The translations under genes and the position numbers were made by a program. A DNA stretch of 63,793 nt, the filler included, from Choristocarpus tenellus KU-1152 (taxonomy: Eukaryota; Protista; Phaeophyceae): assembly GCA_964200185.2 (NCBI GenBank). It is 11 parts of 11 records of this genome, joined end to end, with 100 filler letters (N's around TTAATTAATTAA, not from the genome) between each part and the next. Parts side by side here need not be neighbours in the genome. Positions count along the whole stretch, not along the records: positions 1 to 18,066 come from CAXNAD020000583.1; 10 more parts are not named here. One strand, given 5' to 3'. Shown in pieces: positions 1,585 through 18,066 of this stretch. How positions within the stretch are numbered: position 1 is the first letter of the stretch; every line of letters starts with the position of its first letter. The notes beneath the pieces are model-generated. The model had not been told where the DNA came from. It did no database searches and saw nothing but the letters and a program-made list of their open reading frames with translations.

Positions 1585-4500
1585 CTAGTCCAGCAGCACG
1601 ATGGCCTCCATAGGAACACCGATTTTGAGCAAAATCGATTCAATATAAAACACAAAGCCTGCTGGACCTGACACAGCCACCTGCATCAAGGGAGTAGCCA
1701 CAAGCCGAGGGGGTATGGAGGACAAAATGCATTACAACTCAAGCTAATAATGTATCTAGTTACCCATCCCACACTCAAACCGAGTGACATGAAAGCTGAC
1801 CAGAGTAAACCAGTACACCATTCAGAACAAGGATTGTACTGCAAATATGACCTCTAAAAAAAATCTGAAACCCTATCAACTTGTATGCTGCCCCAGTTCT
1901 CCCACATTTTGATATAAAAATATACACACACTTTGTTTTTCTCTCCCCATAGTAGTGGCTCCAGTGGAAAGATTATGGGAATCGAAAGTTCCCACAAACC
2001 AAACTTTCCACAACGAATCCAAAGGTTACCATCCCATACGCTCCGTCCACATGCAAGGAGATACTTCAATATAGTGTAATGACTGCCTCAGTTCAATACC
2101 CTAAAAAATGCGGTTCAATCTGGGATGCCCAAACCACTAGTTCTGAAGCCTGCTTAAAGACAGTATCACTACAGATAGTAACACCACTTACATTAAATAA
2201 TATCTTAACCTCTAGCCCCAAAATCATTCAAAAACCTTATCAATCACTCTCACAGCTTGTTCATTGTCCCACCAGCAACACTATGGGATCACAGCCAGAC
2301 AAAGCAAATGCATTATCAGTACAAATTGCATCAAAACGACCGGTATTCTTTTAAGTCCATCCCTCTTACCTGAATTCTTCCAGGGCTGTCCTCCTTGCCA
2401 CACAGCTTATCCAATGCTGCAACTGCATCAGCTTGTGCCATCCTAAGCCCAGTGACGCTTTCCAATTTCTGTGCCTCGATTACCTGATGAGCTGCAGAAA
2501 ATATGGAGACTTTTTTCTTATCACCACTTACTGCTTCATCACCAACAGTCTCAACAGGTGCTGCCTTCTCTTCTCTCATCCCCCCCATACCACCTTCAGC
2601 ACCTCGACCCAAGCTTGCCCTTTTCTCGAAGCCACTTTCATCATCATGACCCCCTTCTTCTGGGATGGTAGGAGGAGGCACTGGCAAGAAGGGATGTGGC
2701 ATTGAGGCTGGCACCCTTGACATAGACAGGTATGAGCGTATCTCTTCAAGTACCTCTGGTCCAATGGCCTTCTCCAGCATGGGCTGACTGATCTTGCCCC
2801 TTACCAATCGACTCTCCTTTGTTCAAGAGGTACGGGAGGTTCCGAGAGGAAGTAAGAGGAGTCAGAGAAGAAGGGCCAATATTGTCTAGATGATGAATCT
2901 TAGAATGGAAAGATGAAACCAATGGCATTCTCTCGCCAACATGTTGCTGCTTGGCATCTAACAACAGGGTGCACAAAATATCTCATCAGGACCTCAAAAG
3001 GACCCACATATCAATATCCATCAGTGTGAAGCCTGTCAAATCTAATAGAAGAGTATTCACACTGCATTTCCTCCCTGAATATAGCAGCAGTGTGTTGAAT
3101 AACTAGAGAAAATAAAAAATAAAATCTAACACCATATCATTGTATGACCTTACCTCCATCAAAGCTGAAGTTATCATCTCACTAAAAATCAATCATACCA
3201 GTTAAAAAGCTCGACCTGGTCAGAAGTAGATTTGGCAAATCTCTCAACCCCAACTACCAAGAAGGCACGATTTTGGTTACCAATTAAGACCAGGTAGCTG
3301 CAATCCGGACTGAACAATGCTGTGACATGAAACAAGCTTGGTCATACGCTGCTTTACACACCATACAAGGTCTAAACACAATAACAAACTCCCCCCTCCT
3401 CTCTCTCACCTCTCCCGCATAAGTTGACCCAGATCTGCCTACAACCCAGCTGTTACTGCTGACACTCCCAATGGTGTGTCTCTCGAACTCCACATGTCTT
3501 CCTGATGAAGACCTAGGTGACAATGACCCACCACCCATTGCCTCCTTCCTAAACCAGGTCTTCTTGGGTGTATTCAACTCAACCAATTGGTCAATCGAAC
3601 TTTGCTGTGAACCTGAAGAATTGCCCTTTCTCAGTACCGCACCCATTACTGAGTTCCATATCCCTGACCCTGAACCTGACTCCTTAGAGTGTCCAAGTTC
3701 CGGACCATCTGATGGCACTGCAGCCAGCTCATTAACATATTCCAAGGTCATCTCAGGGGGATGCCCAGGAACAGGAGAGACATTTTGGGATCGGCCAGCC
3801 CGCAACCAGTTCCTTGTCTTTTCAATTGGCAAGGACCTTTCAATTGGGCTACCCCCAAACTTTGCTATCTTCTGCCTAAACGGCGCTGTGCCCTTCTTCT
3901 TTCTTGGCTTGTTTGTGCGGATTGGGTCACCACTGACAAGCGCTGTAAACTCAAACATACCCTTAGATTTGGACTGAATTCGATAGAGGGATGGAGGATA
4001 TGAGACAGGTCAAGGGAGGTAAGAGGTCAATCATTCTTCAATAGATATTACTCGTGGTGTAGATACAAGGGTGGAGCTGACTGGATGAGGGCAAATATCC
4101 TTACAAAGTCCTTACACAAGTACAGAAAGGGGGCGAGTGGGTGTATGGACGAGCGAATGGAATGCTAAACAAAAGCAATGGCAGGGAGAAATATCCAACA
4201 TTTCTTGCCAATATATCGTATTTGTATAGGGAGAGTAAAACATCACCCTAAAAACAGCATGAGAAGCATAACCAAACATGTCCACTCTCACATACAGAGA
4301 GTACTAGCATCATTGTGGTTGATTAGACCATAGGAAAGTCTTGCCAGGGCTGACCTCAATCTCAAATAGCCCCAGCATGTTACACAATACTGTTTACCAA
4401 ATATGACACAACCTTCATTCATACTAGTACTGCTAATAACACAACCTTTCCCTGATCAAGCAAAACTAGAATTAAAAAAAAAGTGCCATGCCATACAAAA

Positions 4501-7379
4501 TAGAAAATGTTCCACACGACTGCTCCCTTCAGAGCCAATGCACCGGCAAACTATTCCCCTATTCCCTTCACATTGCTCGCCACCTGAAGTTCATCCATCT
4601 CAGTCTCGCAGTATATCTCCAGCTCACTACGGTTCTGCCACAGGAGAGATAGCATTGGACGCACCCTGTCTTCCCTTCTCTCACTACTCTCCCCAATCTC
4701 ATTTTCATCGGGCATATCACGGTACCTGGCAAATGTTTTGAAGTCAAGAGTTGACCGATTGTATCACACACACATAAACATACCCATACACCAGATAATG
4801 CATACCATCCAGGATATAGTGTGTCAAGAAGGGGAGAAATGAGAGGTGGTGATATGCTTTGAAATTGTTGTGTCTTGTGGATAACATGTGTAATCTGAAG
4901 GACTCATGACACAGACCAAATGTCTCACGTCTACTAGTACAATACATGTGCAAACCCAGTTGGTTACATGTGACACATACACACACGCTCAAATAATTGG
5001 GTCCTCTGGTAGGTACAGCAAAATATACTTCATCTTAAAAAGTGATCCCAAGTAGATGACCACACCAAAAAGCTGCAAGTGCAATCTTCCACTTGTCAGC
5101 GAAATATATCCTATACTTTTGTACAGTAGGTTACAATTGACACAGGACAAAGAAGCATGAACATTCAGGTTTGTAGAGGGAAAATCCTTGAAAAGGTGTC
5201 ACAATAACTGCTTGCAAACAAACAACACAACCGTGTCACAGTGAGATGGGGAAGACACAATGGTCAAGAGGCCTGGTTGGGATACAATGACTAGCTCTTA
5301 CCTCATAATGTAGTCCCTGATTACCTGCACCACTGTGAGTATATCCCACGGGACCAAGCCACAAAGCGATGGGTGGAAACACAACACAGTAACACAACAG
5401 GTCAGGATGAGACAACAAAGAATTCAAGTGACATAGGATAAAATTGATCTACGTTCGCTTCATTTTGTACTTTGAACCATAGAACATTTCCTCAACTGAA
5501 TCAAAGACCTGGCATAACAAGAACTCCAGACTACTTGGAGGTAGATTGGACCCCACAAGACACACCAAAAAGGGACCACACAAAACAACAATGCAATGGG
5601 TATCTTGGTGTGTGTTGGCAAAGAGATGCACATGTGTGTAGAAGTGCTAGTCTCCAAGAAGGCTCAAATGATGTCCCTCCATGCCACAAACATACTTGGG
5701 TTCACACCAGTCCCAGCTGCAACCATCACCACCCTCGTATGCACTGGAGGAGGGATCAACTTGGAAACCATAAAGGGACCCTGCAGCTGCACCACTGCAT
5801 TATCCGGATCCTGACATTGCAGCAGCACATGTGTACAAGGATATTCCAAGTGCGGTGAGCTGGATGAGATGGGCAGCCATCATACAATATGAAACCAATG
5901 TCAAATCATTTCCATGCCACAACTTCCAATCATCTAACTCCAAATCTACCACGGTAGTAGACACACATTGACAAATATGGACACAATTAAATAAACTAAA
6001 CATATATTTAGACCAACAGAAACTGCCTGTATGTCACACCCATCAAATAGGATGCTTGCAGCCTTTCCCGCCCTGTCAAATCTAGTAATCACTTCTTCAC
6101 ACATATAATACACAAGCCAGACTAATTCCTCCCCCCCCCGTTTTAGTCTCTTACATTGGCCAGCTTCTCAAGGAGATTGCTCATAGACCCATCCGCATAC
6201 AGGCGTATGCGCATCTCTACACACAGCTCTCCTTCCTCTGTTTCAGAGGCATGCGCCACCTTTCCACTCTCTCCACCCCTCCCATGCTGAACCCTAACAG
6301 CAAAGGCATTGTATGACCGTTGAACCACCTGAAACAGGGTATGTACAATCAATCCCGTTGAGAAATCAAAGAAACCAGACAAATAAGAGAGGCAAACTTA
6401 GTCCAAGTTATTGGGCCCTGCTCAGAGTGGACCAAGAATGATAGTAACACCTTCGGCCACAGTACGGTGTTTGGAATACTACAGTAGGAGGACCTCTTGT
6501 ATTTCAAATTCCTTGCCTTCAAACATAACATATCCTGTGCTGTCAATGGAGACAGATCTACACAAGGGTACATGTTGAGAACCTCTTACCTGCCCACTAG
6601 CTCGTGTTATCCTCATGTTGAAGTAGCAAACACCTCTGACAGCCTCCACCTGAACAAGATTAGGTGGGTATGGGGGGGGAGACATGGAGGAATGGTTCAG
6701 CCATACAGCAACAGCAGTCAAGTTATTCATATGAAAGTTCTATCATTTTGTAGCATCCTTTACGGCCTGCAAGGTGTAAGTATCACTCATCATTGAACAA
6801 AAACGTGCCATAACACTATGGTATAAGTAACTACTAATAGAACGGATTTTGAAATATTTGAATACAGAAACAACAGTATCCTGTTCTATTTTCATCTCTC
6901 TGCTCAACACAATTGACTGATGAACACTGGAGTAGGTAATGTACAATGAAACACGCATGGATCGAAGGCCACCACATTTGAAAATATGAAGACTGTGATC
7001 AGTAGTTGTGCACCCTACAATACCATATACCAAACCTAAGCTTTGTCCCACAGATGTGATCCATTCCTATGCATGACAAGTTCTACCAAACCAACTCTCA
7101 TCCATCAGAGCCTTACACACGCAGCACAAAAGAAACAACATTGGTTTCACTTTCAATACGAACACTTACCCCCCCCTCTCCCTTCCCCCCCCAAACCCTC
7201 CATACACTAACCAGAGCTTGGGCTTTCCCTGGACAAGAAAAGATGTAAGAGTAGACTGGTCGGTTGCTTTTGTCCACTCTCACACGCATCAGAAGTGGAC
7301 AGATATGGAAGAGGTTCAAGATTCGTTTATTAGAGGTCTTCCTTGGAAGAGGATCGTGTTCAGCAAGAGCTTCCACATC
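1585..7379 (-). CDS. FAD-binding plus NAD(P)-binding reductase module (cytochrome b5 reductase/FNR family) of the fusion protein
   Basis: RSYNAF (RxY-type FAD motif), IRLYADGSMS (cf. IKxYxxGxMS), LQGPF, MVAAGTGVNPMVQVIR, LSLLWQNRSELEIY, GKISQPMLEK, VAVSGPAGFV...LLKIG. Confidence 0.85.
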
Positions 7380-9153
7380 CTGCAAGGCGGGTTTGTGCAG
7401 ACGTGTAGTGAGCAATAACTGATAAGACAAGTATCTTTTCAGAGTTTGAGAGAGGGTGAAGGTAGGGTTAGGTTTGGCCATCATGGGACTCCATGTTCCT
7501 TAGTAGCTAGGAGGAGAGAGTGGACAAAACAGTGTCAGGATAAGCAACATTGTAGCGACAGAAGAGTGCGAAATTAGAAATGCCATAGACCACGCAAATA
7601 CTTAAAACATACAATTTTCTATGATAATGAAAGACCTTTGTGTCCCATTATTTCTCCCTTTTAGTCATCTCTCCACCTTCACCTGAGAAGCATCCACCTC
7701 ACTGGTATCCATCAGTTTGCTTTCATTTGCTGCATTAGTGCCATCAAAGTTAGTAGAAGTTGGATGTGTTGAGCGCTTCTTGGCCAAGTGGTGGTGGATA
7801 GTGGCCAGGATATTCAATCTCCGTGCAGTTGATGCCTGCAATGTGTTAGCATGCGAAACAGTCAGAACCATAGCACACTATACTTCACGTAAGCACAACC
7901 CAAATATACATATATATATATATATATTGACAAAAAAAAGGTTGTTCCAGGTGATTAAAATTGGTGTGTCTGTGACCAATAAAGGTATACCTTGCGAGTT
8001 GAGCATGATTTTTCTTTACCAGTTACAGCCGTAACACAATACAAGTATGTCATTCCTTAAAAAATAAGCTATAACTTTGAAGTCTAAAATACTGGAATAC
8101 GAAATGTGTCGGCAAAGTGTACACTGACAGCCATGATTTTACCTTAATTACACATAGACAAGACCAGGAAGAGCAAAACAGGCGGTATCATGTTCCGAAA
8201 AATAACAAAAAAAGACCAACAAAGCTTGCATCGTCCTCCTTACTATTTCACCTACCACAAAGCACATGCACACTACTTGACCAGATGGTCCATATTCCTG
8301 CCATGAACACCCCCACCAGGGTCTCATGGACAAGAAGGGCCTCCTCATTTGCACAAACAAGCATCGTCAGGGATCTACATCACTCAAGCAAGGTATCTTC
8401 TTCTATGTCCTCTTCCTTACCCATGAGCATTCCCAGACAAACATCAGAAAATACCAATTCACCCATTTCACATAATCTCAAGTATGTGTTGCACACAACA
8501 TATTAACACCCTGCCCATCTCTCAAGTAGTATAGCTCTTAGCTGACCCAATACAAGTCCAGAGTAGGTTGGGATTTACAAGGAACCAAAAAGTAGAAAGC
8601 AGGAGAGGGTCAAGGGAGAAGTAGTACATAAGGAAAAAAAATCATTAAAAAAACTTCCTTTCTTGCTCAGAGGTCGGAAATAGAGTCTGTACATGAGGAT
8701 GGCAAGCAGGGAATATGAGAGTCGCACCAGGGCAGCAGATCGCATGTCCGAGGGCATCATCATTGGAACTTCAGAGCGATCACTTTCCTCCTTCTCCTCT
8801 TCCTCCAACATGTCGTCCTCGTCCATGTAGCCCACCACCAGAGTCTTGAGGATCTCAATCGCTTCCTGAGAAAAAAAAAAAATCCTTGATGAGTTGGTAA
8901 TTCAGGTTCTACCATACTACTGGTATCAGTCACAAAAATGTATGCAGTTGGGTTGGCCACCGAATAGAATGATTGCTCCTGAGCAAACAATTTCGAATCA
9001 AGATCCTAGAAAATACTTACAACACCGCTGGTCAAGGGTTAGGGGTTAGGCATCAGGCTTCGTTTGCTCGGCTCAGAACATGAACCTCTAAAAAACCTAA
9101 CCCTTAGCTAATTGACAGAAACGTTCTGACACCATTATGATTGTGTCCTTGCT

Positions 9154-9211
<58 letters not shown>

Positions 9212-12200
9212 TGGATACCACCAGAAAAGATCACATCAAACAAGCGAGCACCACTTGGCCGGTTCCAACAGCCACAAAAAGGTGTGCTCCTAGAAACAAA
9301 TGAGAAGGAGGGTCGGCGCTTTGCCTGGAAGGGGGACAGGATGGTTTATCACCCTAGACGGTAGATGCTTTTCAGTGTGGAACATCGACATCGTACAATT
9401 ACCACTTCCTTTTAAAGACAAAAAGAAGCAGCAACATTCAAGTTCAAGTAAACCAACTAAAAAGAACACACCTCAAAAGCTGCGCACTTTTCTCATTTAT
9501 CAGGGAGATGAAAAGATTCACAACATCACCTCTGAGTGCCTATTTGGAGGGAATAACCCCATATTGCCCAGGGAATCCTGCTCCCCCAAGATCTCTGAAG
9601 TTACATCCGTCCCTACCGCATTCAGAATCAGCCTCGCACCCCCTGGATGCCGCTGAGCAAAGCTGGAGACATCAATAACTGCACCATCCACAATTATCCA
9701 CCGGCGACCATTCAACACCTTGCACAGAAACAACAACATCACACGTCCAAAAAAAAGAAATTTACAGAGCAGGGGATTGGGAGGAGAGCGATATCTTGTG
9801 TGCACACATGTACAAAATTGTGTACATGAGATGACCACACATAAAACATCACTTACCAGCAAACAGAGCAACCACGTCAGGTAAATATCCTCTCCCAACT
9901 TGGCGTTTCAGCAACCCACCACAAACAAGGAACCAAACACTATCTCTCAGTCGTCTTCAATTCCCTTCATTCCCAGGATACCTTCTCATTGAACTCTGTA
10001 GTAGTGTAAATTGGGACCTCATCCGTGCGTGGCATGAGGCGATCCATGCCCATGCTATTCTGACTCTCATTGGGGCTATAGTTGGGGTTCATACAGCCAC
10101 ATGAGGTCTTGCCCTTCCTGTGGTACTGAATGGAATCAACAAGGAAATAAAGAGGGGGTGTGTGTGTGTGTGCATATGCATGCAGATATGAATTATGTAT
10201 GTATTTATGTGTATTTAAGAAATAGAAACAGAAACGGCCAGACGACTAGGTAAAGAGGGCTAGTGGTACTTCTACCATCACCACAACCAATACAAAGTGG
10301 TAGAAAGAAGTGAGGTCACTTTCTTTGGTACTCCAGCTAGGAAAAAGAATCAACACAGTGTGTTGGCAAGTAAGTACAAATACAAGTACAAGTACAAGTA
10401 CAAGTACCAGTACGGAGGAACAGCCAGTACCAAATGCAGCAGGAAGGGAACAATGAAAAATATCCTATCTTCCACAAAAACAATTTAAACAAAGATAGTC
10501 GCTACATTCACCCCCCTGCATAAGTCTGTCGGGGTCCTATACACCCTCCCCCATGACCGCTCTCAACAAACAAAATATTAAAATTCTGTTGCCCTTTCCA
10601 TCATTTGGCAACACATACAGGAACACTAAAAGTGGCAGCAACTTCCTTTGTACAAAATTTTAAAAAAATCGACCTACTGTTTAGTGAAGGAAACGCCTTC
10701 AATGCCAAACCAGGCCGCTGCTCCAACCAACTCGAAGTATCACAGCTGCATACCAGATATAACCAATACCAGTATATACACAACCAATACCAGTTCACAC
10801 TGAAAGTACACCAAAACAAAGGGGCCCAAATGCCTCATGGCTCCATCACTCACCTTCTGCATCTGCTTTCTGATTTCAAAAATGAGAAATAAAAAGGCAA
10901 GGAAGCCCATCCAGATGGGAAATATTAATCTTTGGACCAGGCCAAAAGAACCCAGCTACAGGGAGCACAAGAGTGGGCCAGCAGGCAGGGTGCAACGAAC
11001 CGTTATACAATGGCAAAGGGTTAGGGTTAAAAGAGTTGGGAATGGGAGAGGGAGAGAAGGGATCTAAGTATAAATCAATCCAGTCTACTACTACAGAATT
11101 GCATGCCACAGACCAACACAAAAACACAAGACAGTAGTCAACAGCTCAGTAATAATCACAAGGGCATCAAGGCAGCAAAGATGTCTCAATTGAACCACAC
11201 ATGCGGCCATGGATTGAGATGGATGAAATGGATAAGATGAATGAGATGAATAAGATGGATGAGATGAATGAGATGAATAAGATGGATGAGATGAATAAGA
11301 TGAATGAGATGAATAAGATGAATGAGATGAATAAGATGAATGAGATGAATGAGATGAATAAGATGGATGAGATGAATAAGATGAATGAGATGAATAAGAT
11401 GAATAAGATGGATGAGATGAATAAGATGAATGAGATGAATGAGATGAATAAGATGGATGAGATGAATAAGATGGATGAGATGAATAAGATGAATGAGATG
11501 AATAAGATGAATAAGATGGATGAGATGAATGAGATGAATAAGATGGATGAGATGAATAAGATGAATGAGATGAATGAGATGAATAAGATGGATGAGATGA
11601 ATAAGATGAATGAGATGAATAAGATGGATGAGATGAATAAGATGGATGAGATGAATAAGATGAATGAGATGAATAAGATGAATGAGATGAATAAGATGGA
11701 TGAGATGAATAAGATGAATGAGATGAATGAGATGAATAAGATGAATGAGATGAATGAGATGAATGAGATGAATAAGATGGATGAGATGAATAAGATGAAT
11801 GAGATGAATGAGATGGATGAGATGAATAAGATGAATGAGATGAATATGATGAATGACACAAGAAAAACAAAAGAATACTAATAAAAACAACAAACGCTCA
11901 AGGGCTCAACACAAGAGTGAAGTAGGAAGACAAACTAATACATAGGAGATCACACACGACAACATGGGAGGACACACTGAAGTGCCATTCTCACCACAAT
12001 ACACAACCCCAGACCCAATGTGAACCTTCATGACCCTAATACATAAAATGCCGTAAACAAGCGATATCACATTCTGGCCACCCCCGGAAGTCCAAACCCA
12101 ACTAGTTGCTCATTATAAACCAAGGTAGGAAACTTTAGGGGCAGGGGAGGGGTAGGGGGGTGGGTGGGGGGGGGAACGAGATTTGACTCCTTGCTAATTT

Positions 12201-15200
12201 ATCCAGCTATTGTAGTATAGTCGGAGAAAGTTGAAGCATGAGACTGTGCACATTAGTATTGCATTTGAGCACAGGGAGAGTTCAGTTCAGGGGGTACAGA
12301 CAAAGACAGGGATGGGGGAGGGCAATGAACCTCGAATCCAAGGTCCACAGCCTCAAAGATTAGACTGTCCTCCGCTGACACTAGGGAGAGGCCCCGTCCA
12401 CACTGTACAAAGCCAGCCAAGATGGCGGCTCGCCCGCTCCAGATGTGGACATACTTGTTAACCTGCCGACAACAAGCAAAGAGAGCCACCACGGTAAGAA
12501 CATCAATGTGATTGCCAAGAGTCCATCCAGTGCTCAAATGCTTCACCCCACAAAAAAAACTCATGAAAGTAATATATATATATATATAGACGGTGCCAAT
12601 CAAATGCCGTACAAGAAAATACAAAATAGAAGATGAGTCTAGAAAAAAACAGACAAGAGAGAACGAACAAAGGAGTTCCTAAAATTAAGGCTGTTGGAGG
12701 CAGATAACAGACAGCACCTATCTACCGAGAGAAGAAAAAGAGGGGGGAAAGGAAGTGGAAGGCACAAACGGGGCCCAACCATGGACATCATTCGAGCAAA
12801 AAGACTAAGAATCGAAACGAAAAACCTAGCATTAAAAAAGGCATAAGACTAAAACATCTCGCCTCAGATGGCGGGGTTTTTTTTACACACCCCGAACAAA
12901 GGAACCAAAACCCCCCACCTTTCAACTCGAAGGGGATCGGAATGATGACAAACAACTCTTTTTATCAATCCCAACCCGAGACAATAGAGGTGAGAGTTAG
13001 AAACGATTGCAATCGAACGAGGACCCGCAACAGGAATATCAACAGCGGCAACTCTCCCCACCACCCCACCCACCCCACCCCCGATTCCCTTCGCTGCCTC
13101 CTATTTCCCAAGGCATACCCGATGGAAGATTGAAAAGTTGGCATTCTTAGCCTCCAATGCTCGAGTCCGCAACCACCCTGTGAATAACTGTAAAACCACT
13201 GCAGAAATCATGAAGTAGCCTGCAGCCACAAAGCAATGGCAACAGCAGCAAATGCAAAGGATACAATAAAAGGGGGAACATGGGGGGGAGGGCATTTGAT
13301 GGTGCAGTGACAGAAAGCATACCACTACGTTGGGGATGTGTACTTATCCTAGTGATAAGGGACAGGCAATGGTTGAAAAAAGAGTTTCTTCCAGGCAAGT
13401 TTCACAGCTTGGCTTCAAGCACAACAAAAACTGTAAAATCACTTACTCATTCACTTGGTATGGAGGACACAGTAGTCATTGAACAGAGGATGCAAAATCA
13501 AGCTATGGCAGGTAGAAATGGATGGAATGACTAGAACTTGTGGTTTAGCTGGGTCTAATGGGGGTTCAAGAGGCAAGAATCACAGAAAAAATAAAAAAAA
13601 TGGAAACCATTGAACAAAAAGAAAATCGAAAGTGGAAAAACTTGCTGCATCTCGGCTCAGGATGTCTACACTTAGGGTATCCAAGCCTTGTCCTAAAAAG
13701 GATGTATGAACTGGATACAGAGATATACCTTTTACAGCCTCACCTCAACCTTGACCTTTCAAATAGATACATACAATGCACAAATGGTAGAAAATGTAAA
13801 TCAAAACAAGGAAGGTAAGAAGTGGCATGGGATTTACAACAGGCATGACCGAAACCAAGGTAAGGAGTATTCTGCGGGGGCGTCTGTTTCCCTACCAGCA
13901 AAAGGGAGCTAAAAAAAACTTCAGGTAAGCCACTAAAAACAAGTAGGAACTCTGCGTATCAATAGTGTCACAATTCACTCCTCCAGTGATCGCAATGAGT
14001 ATGAGTAAGAAGATGTTGAGCAATTTAATACTAGATACTTGTGTCACTCTGTGAGTGCACTCAAAACCATCCCATACCACTTGAGATCACAGGAAACATC
14101 TCACCCAAATGGGCATGAGGTGAGTTGTGACCTCCCCCACTGGAGGCAGCAATAGCTGTCACACCCAAAGGAATAACAGCTTCAGATGCAATGATCATGG
14201 CCTCTGCGTGTGCCTCATACCAAGGTGTACCCCTTATCTCTGAGCCCTTTCGGTACCTGATGTGAGGGAAGGAGGGAGGGAGGGAAGGCTGGTGGTTGGA
14301 GAGGGGGAGGAGGGGTGTCATTTCATCCGGAAAAATAGTCGAGAAGGGCGACCAATCAGTGGAATGGGGTAGGTCATGTCATGGCGGCAGCCCAAAACAG
14401 TCCATGTATGAAGTAGACCTGCTGACAAAAGAGGTAGATCATAATAGAAATAGACAAGAATGGAGTATAAACGCACTGCTGTAAGGGACGAGATCAAGTC
14501 AGAGCAAAGCATAGGCATCTAAAGTATGAACAGTGACATCATCAGATTCAGGTGGGGGAGGGGGTGATGTGTAGAGCTCGGGGAAATGGGAAGCAGAGCT
14601 ACGGAGACATACGAGGCAAGGCAGATACTGCCATAATAATCACCAACAATGGTGATGCTTCATGTTCAACCCATGAAAGCAGTCAATCCTTACTCCCAAA
14701 TACTTCAACAGGGTACCTGAGCCAGAATCGGCTCCGCTCATTTCACAGGACTGTACTCTTTCTCAACCCTCACTCTCAAACCACTCACCACTTGCTCCCC
14801 TGCCCCCACCCCTAGAAACCCCTCACCTCACAAAGTAGAACCCGAGGGGCACCAGGATAAGCCATGCGATCAGCAGCAGGGCACCATGGAGTGCATAGTA
14901 TTCCGTATCATCATCACAACTTAATCTTGCTTCTCCAGTGGCAAAGTTCAATGAGGCAATCAGGCGTTGAGAGTTTGGATGTTGCCCGATACCTGACCCT
15001 GAACGCCATGCCACAATAATATTGGTGTCAACACCGGCATCAATGTCGGAAAGGAGGTTGTAGTCCTGTTTTGTCGTGTTGAGAAAGAAAGAGTCGTTCA
15101 GAGTAGGTAGAAAAGGTATTAACAAAACTTGCAAGGGAAAGAGTGCAAGGGAAGGCAAGCCAAGAGAGTTTTCAGATGTTGTAGCATAAGCATGTGCACT

Positions 15201-17240
15201 AGGTCAGTGGAAAAATGGGAATGGGTTAGGAGTGAGGCAGAAAATATTGATTGTATCATCACCCTCTCAAACACACCCCTAGCCTATCACTCTTTCACTC
15301 CTTGGCATTCTGTGCAAACTATGGTTGTTCCAGGATCCATTCACCCAGATTGTTTGTTCCATGCATATAATCAAGTAATACATATCATGCACATATACTG
15401 GAACATAACTCTAAGCAGAAACAAGTTGGATATTTGTTTGTTCCATGCATATAATCAAGTAGTACATATCGTACACATACATTGGAACATAACTCTAAAC
15501 AGGAACAAGTTGGATCTTGGGGAGTGGTTTGAAACAACCATACAGACCTCAGTCACATCCCATCAAAATATCACCACTTATCTCAAAGATAGAGAATTTT
15601 GAATTTCGTATCTAAAATCAAGTCATAGATCACATTAACCACCCCTTGGATCTTTCCTTGCCTGTACAAGATTGGTTAGAATGACATATTTTAACCAGAG
15701 TAGGTGAGATATCTACGATAGGATTGAACCACTTCTCAGTATCTACTTCCTGAGATCCCCTTGCTGCTCAAGAGTTACATCTTCCCAATCCTTTGGGGAG
15801 AACACACTGCAGCCACCGCAGACTGGGATGATTGTAACGTAAACTGGGATGGGGTCCAGAGACAGGCTTACCAAAATATGAAGATTGAGATGACTTCTTG
15901 GGGACTACACAGGTACATCAACGGGGGTGATGTTGCACGGAACGAGATGGCCAGTGCACTGGTCTCTGATCTTGCCAAGACATTGACATACTACCACACC
16001 ACCGAGGCAAAAGCCTTCCAAGGAAGGGACCACCGCCACTGCCATATAGTGTATTGATAAATCAATATCTCAGCGACGGAAACAAATGAGGACCTTTTCG
16101 GTGACATTAATAGCCTTGCACCCGCCTCTACATAAAATGCGCCCACTGAAAGGTATTGGAGGGTATGCAAAAAAAGTAGCATGGTCAATTTTCCACCAAA
16201 GATGCACTGTAAACAAACCATGCCACCATATGCCCATCCCATCCTAATCTGTCTCAATACTTCCGACCACATGATGCCTACACACACACACCAAAAGCAA
16301 ATGACCAGACGCCTTCCCCATCTCCACTATCCTAATCCAAAAGCTCGGCAATACTTAAATCTCCACAGGGAGACAGACACTCACCGAGTCATCATCCCCC
16401 TCTGTGCTCCGATCAAAGCTTATCCCTGTCCAGTCTCCCACTATACTAGTGCCGGACACCCTTAGGTACGGATCTCCTTCCAGGTCTATACCAGGTACTT
16501 CACGCCTGTTCATAGTTTAAAAAAACATTGGGTGCTGGTCGAAAATGTGAAGAGTGGAGTGGGAGAGTCCATGCCGTACACGCACATCATCTATAAGCTA
16601 GAAGGGTGCCACAATGTCAGGGATACATAGATTGCCTGCATTGTCATGGTTCAACAGTGAGGAAATAGTACAATGTCAACCAACGCACCTACACAGTCTG
16701 ACGCTCCACACCAATCATGGCAAAACTACCAACCTCACGGGGGAGTGAGGCGTGACAAAGTGGTGGCAGTGATGACCTTGGAGGACAACAACAGCCTTCA
16801 ACACCATCTGGTCCATCAACAAACATCGGCAAAAGCTCTCTAATTCTACATACAAACACAAGTCAACTCATTCGATGTATCCTGAATGCCCAACAAATTC
16901 ATGTATGTGCACATGATAGGTGCAATACCTTATGTCACGAGCATGTGTGTGTGTGAGTGTGTGTGAGTGTGTATTGTGCTCTTACGAGGAAACAGAAGAT
17001 CTGTCTATGCACTCAGAGTCCTCACTGTTCTTGACTTCACATATCACATAGTCTTTGGCTGTCGTCATCAAAGAACCCCCAAAGCCAATGCCCTGGTCAT
17101 TCAAATTCAACACACATGAGCAAACACACACAAGAGTGCACAAGCAAAGGATCGTGTGATCATCAAAGGGCAGACAGGGAGGAGAAAGTCAGTGAGGGCA
17201 AGGGGGGGGCATACCATCCAGGAGGATACATCAAATCTTG
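1585..17240 (-). CDS. Multi-exon DOMON - cytochrome b561 - cytochrome b5 - FAD/NAD(P)H oxidoreductase fusion protein (5' incomplete, ~1,130 aa recovered)
   Basis: Hand-spliced GT-AG exons, all phase-compatible, 5'->3': 17240-17215, 17092-16986, 16505-16385, 15065-14827, 14256-14105, 13219-13119, 12462-12331, 10955-10854, 10125-9982, 9718-9530, 8865-8728, 7835-7683, 7379-7212, 6649-6590, 6328-6155, 5810-5696, 5332-5302, 4725-4584, 3973-3410, 2816-2370, 1680-1585 (TAG stop). Motifs in order: SWMGIGFGGSLM..DYVIC..CIDR, GIGQH (DOMON); LHGALLLIAW, WYEAH, HAHLG, VHIWSGR (b561); DVSSFAQRHPGG..RHSEEA (b5); RSYNAF, IRLYADGSMS, QGPF, VMVAAGTGVNPM, LLWQNRSE, GKISQPML, VSGPAGF (FNR/b5R family). A few linker-exon acceptors are best guesses. 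Confidence 0.9.
8820..10030 (-). CDS. Cytochrome b5-like heme-binding domain exons of the fusion protein
   Basis: PIYTTTEFNEK|VLNGRRWIIVDGAVIDVSSFAQRHPGGARLILNAVGTDVTSEI...RHSE|EAIEILKTLVVG. It has the canonical WI..DG.V.DV..F...HPGG...G.D.T and HS..A..L...G motifs. Confidence 0.9.
9156..9208. repeat. (CA)n microsatellite, intronic
   Basis: Uninterrupted AC run. Confidence 0.95.
10854..14930 (-). CDS. Cytochrome b561 transmembrane domain exons of the fusion protein
   Basis: Hydrophobic helices with four canonical His: YALHGALLLIAWLILVPLG, PWYEAHAEAM, SPHAHLGYFMISAVVLQLFTG, KYVHIWSGR. A fifth helix follows (LIFPIWMGFLAFLFLIFEIRK). Confidence 0.85.
11213..11855. repeat. 9-bp-unit minisatellite (~70 units; GATGAATAA / GATGAATGA / GATGGATGA), intronic
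   Basis: Directly visible. It lies between exons 12462-12331 and 10955-10854. Confidence 0.97.
14930..17240 (-). CDS. DOMON domain exons of the fusion protein (N-terminal part missing)
   Basis: Spliced translation RFDVSSWM|GIGFGGSLMTTAKDYVICEVKNSEDSECIDRSSVS|SREVPGIDLEGDPYLRVSGTSIVGDWTGISFDRSTEGDDDS|DYNLLSDIDAGVDTNIIVAWRSGSGIGQHPNSQRLIASLNF matches the DOMON pattern (W.GIGF...M...D, F.R, IIxA..H). Both the Met and His heme ligands are present. Confidence 0.8.
15350..15514. repeat. Tandem duplication of ~83 bp, intronic
   Basis: TTGTTTGTTCCATGCATATAATCAAGTA...AACAAGTTGGAT occurs twice back to back. Confidence 0.9.
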
Positions 17241-18066
17241 CTTGAGATGTAACATATGTATGGGAAGGAATAAATGTCAAGAGCATCATCATTACTGGGC
17301 ACAAGGTGCAAAAGAGACCACACCCAATTCTTTGGTAACACTACGCATCACAATCAAAATCACTCACAAGTTGGAAAACTCTAGCCCTTGCTGGTGTCCT
17401 GCCAAGCACTACGTCTTGAGTTCACATATTGTTGCATTCAGAGGACAATGTCTCCTAACAATACTTGCAAGGCAATGGGTTTTATCTTTATGCAAAGATG
17501 TTCCTAAGTCTCGCGCTTGCCAAATAGGGCCAACAATACATTTCCACCTACTTCATAGTAGGCGTGCACAGACATCACGCCTAGGCTGCAAAAAAGAGCA
17601 AGAGGATGTGCGTTCAAAACTATGGATAAAGCACTCCACAATAACAAGTCACATTGACTAGAGCCTCTTAACCCCTTCCAAAAAAATACATTACAAATCT
17701 TTGTGTTTTGACTACCTCTATCAAGAGTCACAAACAAAAAACCTACCACAACACAGATAATCTCTTACAGCACAACTCTGCCCATTCTTGCGATGCAAAT
17801 TTGGTTATACTATTGTTATGTACATACCTCTTTCATCCACAAGTGTGTCTTGTTGAAGCCAGTCAAATCACATCAAGGGTAAAAATGAATCCTTCACAAT
17901 TTATTACAAACAGGTAATGCAAACATCGTTACCCCAAAAACCAGGTGGGCAGGAGCAGACTCCTCGGTGTTGAAGAGAGGTAGAGGGGCCTCCCTCTCCC
18001 CCCCCCCTACCTCTCAGCTACAATGTCCTGCCCCCCCTCACTTGCCACAACTTGATCGCCACCCTG

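What the first reader, a model, noticed from the sequence alone, without database searches (positions are those of the whole stretch)
1585..17240. Self-contained trans-membrane electron chain: DOMON + cytochrome b561 + cytochrome b5 + NAD(P)H/FAD reductase in one polypeptide
Seen: at least 21 exons splice in phase into one ORF, most of them invisible or mis-framed in the ORF track. All putative heme ligands are retained: DOMON Met/His, four b561 His and two b5 His, plus FAD and NAD(P) motifs. Known: CYBDOM/FRRS1-type DOMON-b561 proteins depend on cytosolic ascorbate. The b5 + b5-reductase pair is the diaphorase module of nitrate reductase and NCB5OR. NOX/FRE enzymes use a different di-heme membrane domain. 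Inference: five helices put DOMON outside and b5/reductase in the cytosol, giving NAD(P)H -> FAD -> b5 -> 2x b561 heme -> external DOMON heme. That would be a NOX/FRE-independent plasma-membrane reductase, possibly for ferric or cupric chelates, apoplastic redox or ROS, halogen chemistry, or feeding wall oxidases. I know of no biochemical characterisation, though similar architectures may sit unannotated in databases.
Basis: partly seen in the sequence, partly recalled or inferred. Interest (0 to 1): 0.88.

Follow-up and report, generated by a model that had tools for sequence, protein, structure and literature searches.

The report
Five-domain transmembrane redox enzyme gene
This brown-alga contig carries most of one expressed gene that strings a cytosolic NAD(P)H reductase, a cytochrome b5, a membrane cytochrome b561 and an outward-facing DOMON haem domain into one protein; its relatives also carry an outer peroxidase-like head, so it looks like an unstudied, differently built counterpart of the dual oxidases.

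Summary
The core observation holds. The window is a whole 18,066-bp contig of the brown alga Choristocarpus tenellus. On its minus strand, 20 GT-AG exons (17092 to 1585) join in phase into 1,114 codons. They encode DOMON (first ~30 residues missing), a five-helix cytochrome b561, cytochrome b5 and an FNR/b5-reductase-like FAD/NAD(P) module. All proposed haem ligands are invariant across relatives.

One public run behaves as RNA-seq. Its spliced contigs prove four junctions, including 12331|10955, and their lengths fit one mRNA from DOMON into the NAD domain.

Two corrections:
RNA splices exon 17092 to an upstream exon absent from the contig and the assembly, so the gene is cut at its 5' end.
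- The family is not just DOMON-to-reductase. Full-length relatives in brown algae and Thalassiosirales diatoms start with a signal peptide and an animal-haem-peroxidase-like domain. The "peroxidase-less" database models are truncated or split.

Most likely mechanism (inferred): NAD(P)H -> FAD -> b5 -> two b561 haems -> external DOMON haem -> peroxidase-like head or external acceptor. I found no paper describing this architecture; database entries read "unnamed protein product" or "peroxidase".

The parts
16986..17092 (-). Exon 1 as held in the window: DOMON strand GIGFGGSLM..., including the invariant Met (putative haem ligand). The acceptor AG is at 17094-17093; the true upstream exon is not in the window.
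   Evidence: tblastn to P0033 and P0055; X3 RNA depth and the loose end at 17093; Met invariant in A3; GT-AG and phase.
16385..16505 (-). Exon 2: middle of DOMON (REVPGIDLEG...DDDS).
   Evidence: X3 contig record 19 and the joint 16385|15065; mapping of P0001.
14827..15065 (-). Exon 3: end of DOMON with the invariant His (GQHPN), then b561 helix 1 with His 1 (YYALHG).
   Evidence: X3 record 19; phmmer found 53 relatives with this exon; alignments A1 and A3.
14105..14256 (-). Exon 4: cytosolic loop RYRKGSEIR, helix 2 with His 2 (YEAHAE), and the outer loop with His 3 (PHAHLG).
   Evidence: X3 joint 14105|13219; A1 invariant His.
13119..13219 (-). Exon 5: b561 helix 3 and a basic cytosolic loop.
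   Evidence: X3 records 17 and 19 overlap here; joint 13119|12462.
12331..12462 (-). Exon 6: helix 4 with His 4 (NKYVHIW) and an acidic outer loop.
   Evidence: X3 record 17; its loose end at 12331 equals window 10926-10955; A1.
10854..10955 (-). Exon 7: fifth transmembrane helix (LIFPIWMGFLAFLFLIFEI) followed by RKQMQK.
   Evidence: RNA junction 12331|10955; AlphaFold helix 166-204 of the model; hydropathy.
9982..10125 (-). Exon 8: cytosolic linker and the start of cytochrome b5 (PIYTTTEFNEK).
   Evidence: P0001 mapping and GT-AG; tblastn to P0033.
9530..9718 (-). Exon 9: cytochrome b5 core with HPGG and the second His (NRHSE).
   Evidence: Pfam Cyt-b5, E = 1.5e-11 on the ORF and 1.9e-12 on P0001.
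8728..8865 (-). Exon 10: last b5 helix (EAIEILKTLVVGY) and an acidic linker.
   Evidence: Donor TTG|GTAAGA. P0074 lacks the 48 residues that the NCBI model adds after 8728.
7703..7835 (-). Exon 11: poorly conserved linker.
   Evidence: P0001 mapping and GT-AG; partial match to P0074. No RNA evidence was laid here.
7212..7369 (-). Exon 12: start of the FAD-binding barrel (FHICPLL...RPVYSYIFSCPGKAQAL).
   Evidence: tblastn to P0033, P0055 and P0010; A2. The exact boundaries are predicted.
6590..6649 (-). Exon 13: FAD barrel strand (GVCYFNMR).
   Evidence: P0001 mapping and GT-AG; A2.
6155..6328 (-). Exon 14: FAD motifs RSYN (RxYS/T-type) and GSMS.
   Evidence: Pfam FAD_binding_6 at 15 bits, below cut-off; profile A2 hits NADH-cytochrome b5 reductases in the PDB, E = 6.9e-6.
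5696..5810 (-). Exon 15: LQGPF and GTGVNP, the first strand and glycine loop of the NAD(P) domain.
   Evidence: 59-67% identity to homologs whose NAD_binding_1 hit passes Pfam's cut-off; profile A4 hits FNR at 1e-5 and b5R at 6e-5.
5302..5332 (-). Exon 16: (M)VQVIRDYIM. The true donor is GAG|GTAAGA at 5302; the NCBI model reads through it to a stop.
   Evidence: The X3 record-17 length (1243 nt beyond 12331) matches the sum of exons 7-16 (1244 nt).
4584..4725 (-). Exon 17: NAD(P) domain strand 2 (LSLLWQNRSELEIY).
   Evidence: tblastn to P0033, P0055, P0061, P0070 and P0074; splice sites and phase.
3410..3973 (-). Exon 18: SKSKGMFEFTALVSGD..., then a long low-complexity insertion. The donor at 3410 is predicted.
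   Evidence: tblastn to P0033, P0070 and P0074; best donor GAG|GTGAGA; no Pfam hit.
2370..2816 (-). Exon 19: LVRGKISQPMLEKAIGPEVL, a second insertion, ending ...SPGRIQ.
   Evidence: tblastn to P0033, P0058, P0059 and P0061; donor CAG|GTAAGA.
1585..1680 (-). Exon 20: VAVSGPAGFVFYIESILLKIGVPMEAIVLLD plus the TAG stop. This is the C-terminal strand and helix of the NAD(P) domain (SGP in place of CGP).
   Evidence: 45-67% identity to the C-termini of seven full-length homologs; acceptor and phase.

Best explanation
The window holds the 3' 1,114 codons of one expressed gene for a multi-haem flavocytochrome of a family found in brown algae and Thalassiosirales diatoms. Domain order is (signal peptide and peroxidase-like domain, off the contig) - DOMON - five-helix cytochrome b561 - cytochrome b5 - FNR/b5-reductase-like FAD/NAD(P)H domain.

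Shown: exon structure, one transcript across the modules, domain identities, conservation of every haem ligand, and five predicted helices with a positive-inside pattern that puts DOMON outside and b5/reductase in the cytosol.

Inferred: cytosolic NAD(P)H reduces FAD, FAD reduces the b5 haem, and b5 replaces ascorbate as donor to the cytosolic b561 haem. The electron crosses to the outer b561 haem and the DOMON haem. From there it goes to the protein's own peroxidase-like head (probable for this copy) or to an external acceptor. Which external reaction is served (O2 reduction to ROS, reduction of the head's haem, or metal chelates) is not settled.
For: Gene and transcript:
- 20 exons, all GT-AG, in phase, no internal stop.
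- X3 spliced contigs prove four junctions and overlap in exon 5. Record 19 (541 nt) equals exons 2+3+4 plus 28 nt. Record 17 runs 1243 nt past 12331, and exons 7-16 sum to 1244 nt.
- The NCBI model CAM9198778.1 (P0001) already joins b561, b5 and FAD.

Conservation of the fusion:
- More than 25 brown-algal proteins and diatom genome proteins.
- A diatom protein from a transcriptome-derived set (P0050) carries peroxidase, four-His b561, b5 and FAD in one ORF.
- Paralogs on C171 and C173 show the same order on one strand.

Domains:
- Cyt-b5, Pfam 1.9e-12.
- DOMON passes Pfam's cut-off in P0055 and P0064; Met and His are invariant.
- b561: four invariant His aligned with Pfam-positive b561 proteins. 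The profile hits only b561 structures in the PDB (4o6y at 1e-3, 5zle). The five best Foldseek hits are b561 structures, TM 0.49-0.60.
- Reductase: PDB profile hits to b5R (6.9e-6) and FNR (1e-5). NAD_binding_1 passes the cut-off in homologs.

Topology: five long helices and the K/R distribution.

Peroxidase head in the family.
Against: - No biochemical data exist; electron flow is inferred from domain order and from CYBDOM precedent.
- Pfam PF03188 (b561) does not reach threshold on this protein or its brown-algal relatives. The Foldseek E-values are weak (about 0.02).
- FAD_binding_6 is below cut-off, and the model of the FAD region had low confidence.
- RNA evidence downstream of 10955 rests on one contig's length, not on laid sequence.
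- The 5' exons are missing from the assembly, so a peroxidase head for this copy is inferred, not seen.
- In brown algae the head lacks the canonical distal His, so its chemistry is unclear.
- The b561-b5 docking prediction gave no verdict.
Confidence: 0.7

Rival explanations
1. One reading: a stand-alone DOMON-b561-b5-reductase protein without a peroxidase head. It would act as a NOX/FRE-independent plasma-membrane reductase for ferric or cupric chelates or other apoplastic acceptors.
For: - The window itself shows no peroxidase exon.
- Database models such as P0033, P0058 and P0063 lack a peroxidase domain.
- The characterised CYBDOM HYP1 reduces ferric and cupric substrates (PMC10784544).
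Against: - RNA shows at least 255 nt of further upstream transcript outside the contig.
- P0058 and P0063 start inside the C-terminal GDRF motif of the peroxidase domain and have no signal peptide.
- The gene directly upstream of P0033, on the same strand, is an An_peroxidase fragment.
- This genome has orphan contigs with peroxidase exons. One of them, C24213, matches P0055 as far as the first residues of its DOMON (residue 603; Pfam places the DOMON at 600-723) and stops just before the part held in the window.
- Full-length relatives all carry a signal peptide plus peroxidase domain.
- Metal-chelate reduction by the DOMON haem is still possible alongside a head domain.
Confidence: 0.15
2. 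The modules share a polypeptide but do not form one chain. The b5/reductase cassette would serve a cytosolic or ER acceptor, as b5R-b5 does for desaturases. The b561-DOMON part would still take electrons from ascorbate, like other CYBDOM proteins.
For: - All characterised b561 proteins use ascorbate (PMC10784544).
- The b561-b5 docking prediction gave no support (not evidence either way).
- The linker between helix 5 and b5 is about 40 residues and poorly conserved.
Against: - The fusion order b561-b5-FAD-NAD is kept from brown algae to diatoms, which argues for a functional unit.
- b5 sits directly after the last helix, on the side of the cytosolic b561 haem.
- An ESM Atlas cluster of about 328-residue proteins combines b561 and Cyt-b5 hits in other eukaryotes (a lead only).
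Confidence: 0.1
3. Annotation or assembly artefact: two or more neighbouring genes (a CYBDOM gene and a b5-reductase gene) wrongly read as one.
For:
- The linker exons (8865-7212) are poorly conserved, and the NCBI model differs from mine there.
Against: - The RNA junction 12331|10955 and a contig running 1243 nt further, which matches the spliced length to exon 16.
- There is no stop and no phase break across 20 exons.
- The same fusion occurs in a diatom transcriptome ORF and in many genomes.
Confidence: 0.03

Closest known systems
CYBDOM proteins (DOMON + cytochrome b561; e.g. Arabidopsis HYP1/CRR, soybean CYBDOM, animal FRRS1/SDR2)
   Same: An extracytoplasmic DOMON with a Met/His haem site, then a five-helix b561 core with two His pairs. 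Together they form a three-haem conduit across the membrane (PMC10784544).
   Different: CYBDOMs end after the last helix and take electrons from cytosolic ascorbate. This protein continues into b5 and an FAD/NAD(P)H reductase, and in the family it begins with a peroxidase-like domain. Pfam's b561 model does not reach threshold.
b5 + b5-reductase cassettes (NCB5OR/CYB5R4, the C-terminal half of assimilatory nitrate reductase)
   Same: Cyt-b5 is followed by an FNR-type FAD and NAD(P)H domain in one chain. The nearest solved relatives of the reductase are NADH-cytochrome b5 reductases.
   Different: Those proteins are soluble and deliver electrons to a cytosolic centre (Mo-cofactor, or other acceptors). 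Here the cassette is tethered to a membrane b561. The NAD domain carries two long insertions totalling about 300 residues, and SGP replaces the CGP motif.
Dual oxidases (DUOX) and NOX/FRE flavocytochromes
   Same: Overall logic: cytosolic FAD/NAD(P)H domain, a two-haem membrane domain and, in DUOX, an extracellular peroxidase-homology head that may lack canonical catalytic residues. DUOX1 is among the PDB matches of the family's head domain.
   Different: The membrane module is b561 (5 TM), not the six-helix ferric-reductase domain, and no PF01794 hit appears. Two extra haem domains (b5, DOMON) are inserted in the path. There are no EF-hands. NAD_binding_6 scores below cut-off.
Cellobiose dehydrogenase (flavin domain + DOMON-like cytochrome domain feeding LPMO)
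   Same: A Met/His b-haem in a DOMON-type beta sandwich acts as a mobile relay from a flavoenzyme to an external metallo-enzyme (established knowledge; PDB 4QI3 is cited in PMC10784544).
   Different: CDH is soluble and secreted, and its flavin domain is of the GMC type. Here the flavin is cytosolic and the relay crosses a membrane.

Membership tests
CYBDOM (DOMON + b561) | DOMON domain with conserved Met and His haem ligands | tested here: met
   Met (GGSLM) and His (GQHPN) are invariant in A3, which includes Pfam-positive DOMON proteins. PF03351 passes its cut-off in the homologs P0055 (36.9 bits) and P0064 (38.1 bits). The window holds only about profile positions 30-124, and Pfam does not hit the window's own fragment.
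CYBDOM (DOMON + b561) | b561 core: four His on four consecutive helices, forming two haem sites | tested here: met
   H128, H164, H195 and H238 of P0001 are invariant in A1 alongside Pfam-positive b561 proteins. The PDB profile search returns only b561 proteins. The five best Foldseek hits are b561 structures.
CYBDOM (DOMON + b561) | Pfam PF03188 at or above the gathering score | tested here: not met
   No hit on contig C583 in the six-frame genome scan, nor on P0001, P0010 or P0033. The brown-algal branch is too divergent for the model.
CYBDOM (DOMON + b561) | Five-helix topology with DOMON outside and the C-terminus in the cytosol | tested here: met
   The AlphaFold model has five long helices. 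K/R-rich loops follow TM1, TM3 and TM5, and the TM4-5 loop is acidic. Signal peptides are present in full-length relatives. This is prediction only.
CYBDOM (DOMON + b561) | Cytosolic ascorbate as electron donor | not testable with these tools
   Needs an assay. The fused b5/reductase suggests a different donor.
Cytochrome b5 (PF00173) | Pfam hit above cut-off, with the HPGG His and the second His (H-S-x-x-A) | tested here: met
   47.4 bits against a cut-off of 23.7 on P0001; 44.6 bits on the window ORF. The sequence reads RHPGG ... NRHSEEA, with a 12-13-residue loop insertion.
FNR superfamily, b5-reductase type (FAD_binding_6 + NAD_binding_1) | RxY(S/T) and GxxS FAD motifs, the GTGxxP glycine loop, and the C-terminal CGP strand | tested here: met
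   RSYN, GSMS and GTGVNP are present. The CGP strand reads SGPAGF. Profiles hit b5R (6.9e-6) and FNR (1e-5) in the PDB.
FNR superfamily, b5-reductase type (FAD_binding_6 + NAD_binding_1) | Pfam domains above the gathering score | tested here: inconclusive
   NAD_binding_1 passes in the homologs P0033, P0055, P0058, P0063 and P0059 (24.5-28.4 bits against 22). On P0001 it scores only 13.5 bits because that model is truncated. FAD_binding_6 scores 14-17 bits against 21.1 everywhere. The structure model of this part had low confidence and its fold search gave noise.
NOX/FRE/DUOX | Six-helix ferric-reductase membrane domain (PF01794) with FAD_binding_8 and NAD_binding_6 | tested here: not met
   No PF01794 or PF08022 hit on any family member. 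NAD_binding_6 scores only 13.6-19.2 bits, below its cut-off of 22.2.
Animal haem peroxidase (PF03098) head domain | Domain present N-terminal to DOMON, with the canonical distal His (QxxDHD) | tested here: inconclusive
   The domain is strong in relatives (196-252 bits) and in paralogs on C171 and C173. It is off the contig for this copy. The distal His is replaced by Y, F or L in brown algae (WGQLLTYD) and on Choristocarpus contig C14748 (AWAMLLGFD).

The most novel reading that the evidence does not exclude
Brown algae and Thalassiosirales diatoms may have a functional analogue of dual oxidase built from different parts. A cytosolic NAD(P)H/FAD-b5 cassette would drive electrons through a b561-DOMON haem wire to a covalently attached extracellular peroxidase-fold haem domain that has lost its distal His. 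That head would use the electrons to reduce O2 (a regulated ROS or oxidative-burst source, or reductive O2 activation for wall or halogen chemistry) instead of acting as a classical peroxidase. The window would be the membrane and cytosolic two-thirds of one such enzyme.
Probability: 0.3. Interest if true: 0.85.

Novelty: new variant of a known kind. Interest (0 to 1): 0.68.

Why it matters
Every characterised b561 or CYBDOM electron transporter depends on cytosolic ascorbate. Every known NAD(P)H-driven trans-membrane reductase (NOX, DUOX, FRE/FRO, STEAP) uses a different membrane haem domain. A b561 wire with its own NAD(P)H-FAD-b5 feeder would be a third way to export reducing power.

The conserved fusion to a peroxidase-like ectodomain points to a defined extracellular redox reaction in two ecologically dominant algal groups. 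Oxidative bursts, apoplastic halogen and phenolic chemistry, and iron acquisition all matter there.

The protein is also a natural five- or six-cofactor electron wire in a single chain, which makes it attractive for structural and bio-electrochemical work. The claim is directly testable by expression with NADH/NADPH versus ascorbate.

Tried and rejected
- Pfam on single exons gave only Cyt-b5 and a weak FAD hit. The six-frame scans for b561, DOMON, FAD and NAD did not list this contig.
- No run is on record as RNA. X3 nevertheless turned out to behave as RNA-seq.
- I looked for the upstream exon read from RNA. It is absent from the paralog and orphan contigs held and from the whole assembly, even with two mismatches.
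- I found no end overlap between this contig and the orphan peroxidase contigs.
- A low-stringency tblastn of the DOMON N-termini and linkers of 18 homologs against 16900-18066 found nothing upstream of about 17131.
- A search for a near-identical transcript-derived protein in the 90% clusters found none.
- Complex prediction on b561 (with three haems) plus b5 scored 0.00: no verdict, so not evidence either way.
- The AlphaFold model of the FAD/early-NAD part had pLDDT 62, and its Foldseek matches were noise.
- tRNA and Rfam scans were empty.
- Seven literature searches found no description of the architecture.
- Considered and rejected: that the 17240-17093 frame-0 stretch (FDVSSWM) is the DOMON start, and that a homopolymer frameshift joins it to the next exon. 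The RNA contig splices away at 17093, and the DNA contigs show no indel there.
Exons were sent by reference, and whole-protein searches used database proteins (P0001, P0033, P0050, P0055). The phase check carried only the 0-2 leftover bases between exons.

Full report
**What the window is.** The 18,066 usable bases are the whole of contig C583 of a 164-Mb, 27,310-contig assembly. A phmmer search with one exon found a 738-residue database protein, 100% identical over that exon, recorded on an 18,066-bp contig. It is CAM9198778.1, 'unnamed protein product [Choristocarpus tenellus]', from an early-branching brown alga. All of its segments map exactly to the window. The gene lies on the minus strand.

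**Gene model.**
- I mapped that protein (P0001) back onto the window. This gave 17 exons, every junction with GT-AG.
- The full-length Pylaiella homolog P0033 (1,155 aa) and others align by tblastn exon by exon, from 17092 down to 1588. The NCBI model therefore stops too early: it reads through the donor GAG|GTAAGA at 5302 into a stop.
- It also reads through a strong donor at 8728 and adds a 41-nt mini-exon. The closest relative, Discosporangium P0074, lacks exactly those 48 residues.
- My model has 20 exons: 17092-16986, 16505-16385, 15065-14827, 14256-14105, 13219-13119, 12462-12331, 10955-10854, 10125-9982, 9718-9530, 8865-8728, 7835-7703, 7369-7212, 6649-6590, 6328-6155, 5810-5696, 5332-5302, 4725-4584, 3973-3410, 2816-2370 and 1680-1585.
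- Every exon has AG and GT at its edges, phase is continuous, no split codon is a stop, and there is no internal stop. The total is 3,345 nt, or 1,114 codons plus TAG.
- The boundaries 7703/7369/7212 and 3410/2816 lie in poorly conserved sequence and are predictions.
Exons went to tools by reference. The phase check carried only the leftover 0-2 bases.

**Transcript evidence.**
- No run is on record as RNA. When the three holders were laid on 12100-18066, X1 and X2 covered the stretch evenly, like DNA. X3 had depth 120-444 on exons and 0-8 in introns.
- X3's contigs skip 15064-16384, 13218-14104 and 12460-13117 with CT..AC ends, which is GT..AG on the gene strand.
- The loose end at 12331 equals window 10926-10955. 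The fourth b561 helix exon is therefore spliced to the fifth-helix exon.
- Record 19 (541 nt) equals exons 2+3+4 plus 28 nt of exon 5. Record 17 (1,477 nt) starts at exon 5, covers exon 6 and runs 1,243 nt further. Exons 7-16 of my model sum to 1,244 nt.
It matches one mRNA from DOMON through b561, b5 and FAD into the NAD domain, with contigs breaking at exon edges.

**The 5' end is missing.**
- At 17093 the X3 contig leaves the window for at least 255 nt. Its first 30 letters read, in gene sense and in frame...ALDIGEEGML|GIGFGG. This is the family motif (compare P0064 LGIGDSGMMGIGFGG).
- The 30-mer is absent from the whole assembly. Both this contig and candidate neighbour contigs end in G-rich runs.
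- An X1 DNA contig runs about 894 nt beyond 18066.

**Domains.**
- *b5:* Pfam 1.9e-12, with HPGG and RHSEEA.
- *DOMON:* passes Pfam's cut-off in P0055 and P0064. The Met of GGSLM and the His of GQHPN are the only invariant columns in an alignment that includes Pfam-positive DOMON-b561 proteins. The NCBI model's 'start' Met is in fact this ligand Met.
- *b561:* Pfam's model fails. However, four His are invariant and align with Pfam-positive b561 proteins. The family profile hits only Arabidopsis b561 and human Dcytb in the PDB (1e-3 and 0.012). An AlphaFold model (pLDDT 73.5) has five long helices, and its five best Foldseek matches are b561 structures.
- *Reductase:* RSYN, GSMS, LQGPF and GTGVNP are present, with a C-terminal VSGPAGF strand. 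Profiles hit NADH-b5 reductases (6.9e-6) and FNRs (1e-5) in the PDB. NAD_binding_1 passes its cut-off in homologs. FAD_binding_6 stays below.
- Two low-complexity insertions of about 300 residues in total split the NAD domain in all members.
- NADH versus NADPH is open. An acidic residue sits where I recall b5 reductase has its NADH-specifying Asp (from memory; that alignment was not displayed). The S-x-x-x-R-x-N stretch aligns with the FNR segment that I recall binds the 2'-phosphate.

**Topology.** The loops after helices 1, 3 and 5 are rich in K/R. The loop between helices 4 and 5 has five acidic and no basic residues. His 1 and His 3 lie at the outer ends of their helices, and His 2 and His 4 at the inner ends. 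This is the b561 arrangement. It matches the five-helix, DOMON-out model of Arabidopsis HYP1, which is ascorbate-driven (PMC10784544).

**The family has a head domain.**
- Most brown-algal homologs are 1,450-1,850 residues. They begin with a signal-peptide-like stretch and an animal-haem-peroxidase domain of 196-252 bits. One is the 2010-era entry 'peroxidase [Ectocarpus siliculosus]'.
- The shorter models are artefacts. P0058 and P0063 start inside the peroxidase C-terminal GDRF motif. The gene just upstream of P0033, on the same strand, is an An_peroxidase fragment.
- Centric diatoms have the same order plus a DEP hit. It is found in two genomes and one transcriptome-derived protein set.
- In this genome, C171 carries peroxidase exons followed by DOMON, b561, FAD and NAD exons on one strand; C173 carries peroxidase exons followed by at least b5 and NAD exons.
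- A further paralog, 55-76% identical to the window's gene, is scattered over C18625, C1484 and C6206.
- Orphan contigs C14748, C24213 and C18610 carry peroxidase exons. C24213 ends at the DOMON start (P0055 residue 603), and the window begins at about residue 629. Two orphan heads and two headless bodies fit together.
- I put about 0.8 on this copy having the head.
- In brown algae the head's distal-site motif is WGQLLTYD, not the canonical QFxDHD. On C14748 it reads AWAMLLGFD. It is therefore peroxidase-like, not a proven peroxidase, as in mammalian DUOX.

**Mechanism.**
- *Shown:* the parts, their order, their ligands, one transcript, and the predicted sidedness.
- *Inferred:* NAD(P)H -> FAD -> b5 haem -> inner b561 haem -> outer b561 haem -> DOMON haem -> head-domain haem or external acceptor.
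The terminal step is probably intramolecular.
- A docking prediction for b561 with b5 gave no verdict.

**Novelty.**
- Every module is known. CYBDOM, b5/b5R cassettes and DUOX each share part of the plan.
- I found no paper on the combination in seven searches. The database names are uninformative.
- I rate it a new variant of a known kind, with interest 0.68.

Noticed in passing
window 11215-11856: A 642-bp tandem array (18- and 45-bp units, about 90% matches) lies inside the intron between exons 6 and 7. It produces 226-259-aa ORFs on both strands (three minus frames, one plus frame) with no coding meaning.
   Followed up: partly
window 17068, 8727-8628, 8322-8282, 5301: The NCBI model CAM9198778.1 has several errors. 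It starts at the DOMON ligand Met. It reads through the donors at 8728 and 5302. It adds a 41-nt mini-exon. It ends about 380 codons too early.
   Followed up: yes
G000 contigs C171, C173, C18625, C1484, C6206, C14748, C24213, C18610 (loci L016-L024, L026-L028): The genome holds at least four paralogs of the family. Two span peroxidase through NAD exons on single contigs (C171, C173). One is scattered over three contigs and is 55-76% identical to the window's protein. Three orphan contigs carry peroxidase exons that may hold the missing 5' parts.
   Followed up: partly
P0055 residues 117-125; L023:1605-2024; alignment A5: In brown-algal members the peroxidase-like head has Tyr, Phe or Leu where the distal catalytic His should be (WGQLLTYD against the canonical FGQFLAHD). 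A protist peroxidase-DOMON-b561 protein (P0048) keeps the His. The diatom P0050 has FGHFIVRD.
   Followed up: partly
L025:1-5422 and 10001-43107 (Pylaiella): The 'peroxidase-less' Pylaiella model P0033 has an An_peroxidase gene fragment directly upstream on the same strand. This is probably one gene split by the annotation.
   Followed up: partly
window 12301, 12572, 16507/16931: Some X3 loose ends remain unexplained. Two match nothing held. One joins about 16931 to about 16507, which would retain an in-frame TAA. It may be a minor isoform or an artefact of the (GT)n run at 16935-16976.
   Followed up: no
window 17997 and beyond 18066: The X1 DNA contig has one extra C behind 17997, in a homopolymer. 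It extends about 894 nt past the contig end. This contig and C24213 both stop in G-rich runs, which suggests assembly breaks at homopolymers.
   Followed up: no
ESM Atlas, query P0033:225-560: An ESM Atlas cluster of about 328-residue eukaryotic proteins (104 members, some from Mucoromycota) carries Cyt-b5 and Cytochrom_B561 hits. This hints that b561-b5 fusions recur outside stramenopiles.
   Followed up: no
P0050, P0077, P0078 (diatoms): The diatom members carry a DEP-domain hit inside the region that corresponds to the NAD-domain insertion. It is weak on P0050 and precomputed for the two genome proteins.
   Followed up: no
window 9157-9208 and 15350-15515: An (AC)26 microsatellite and an 84-bp direct duplication. 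Both are intronic.
   Followed up: no
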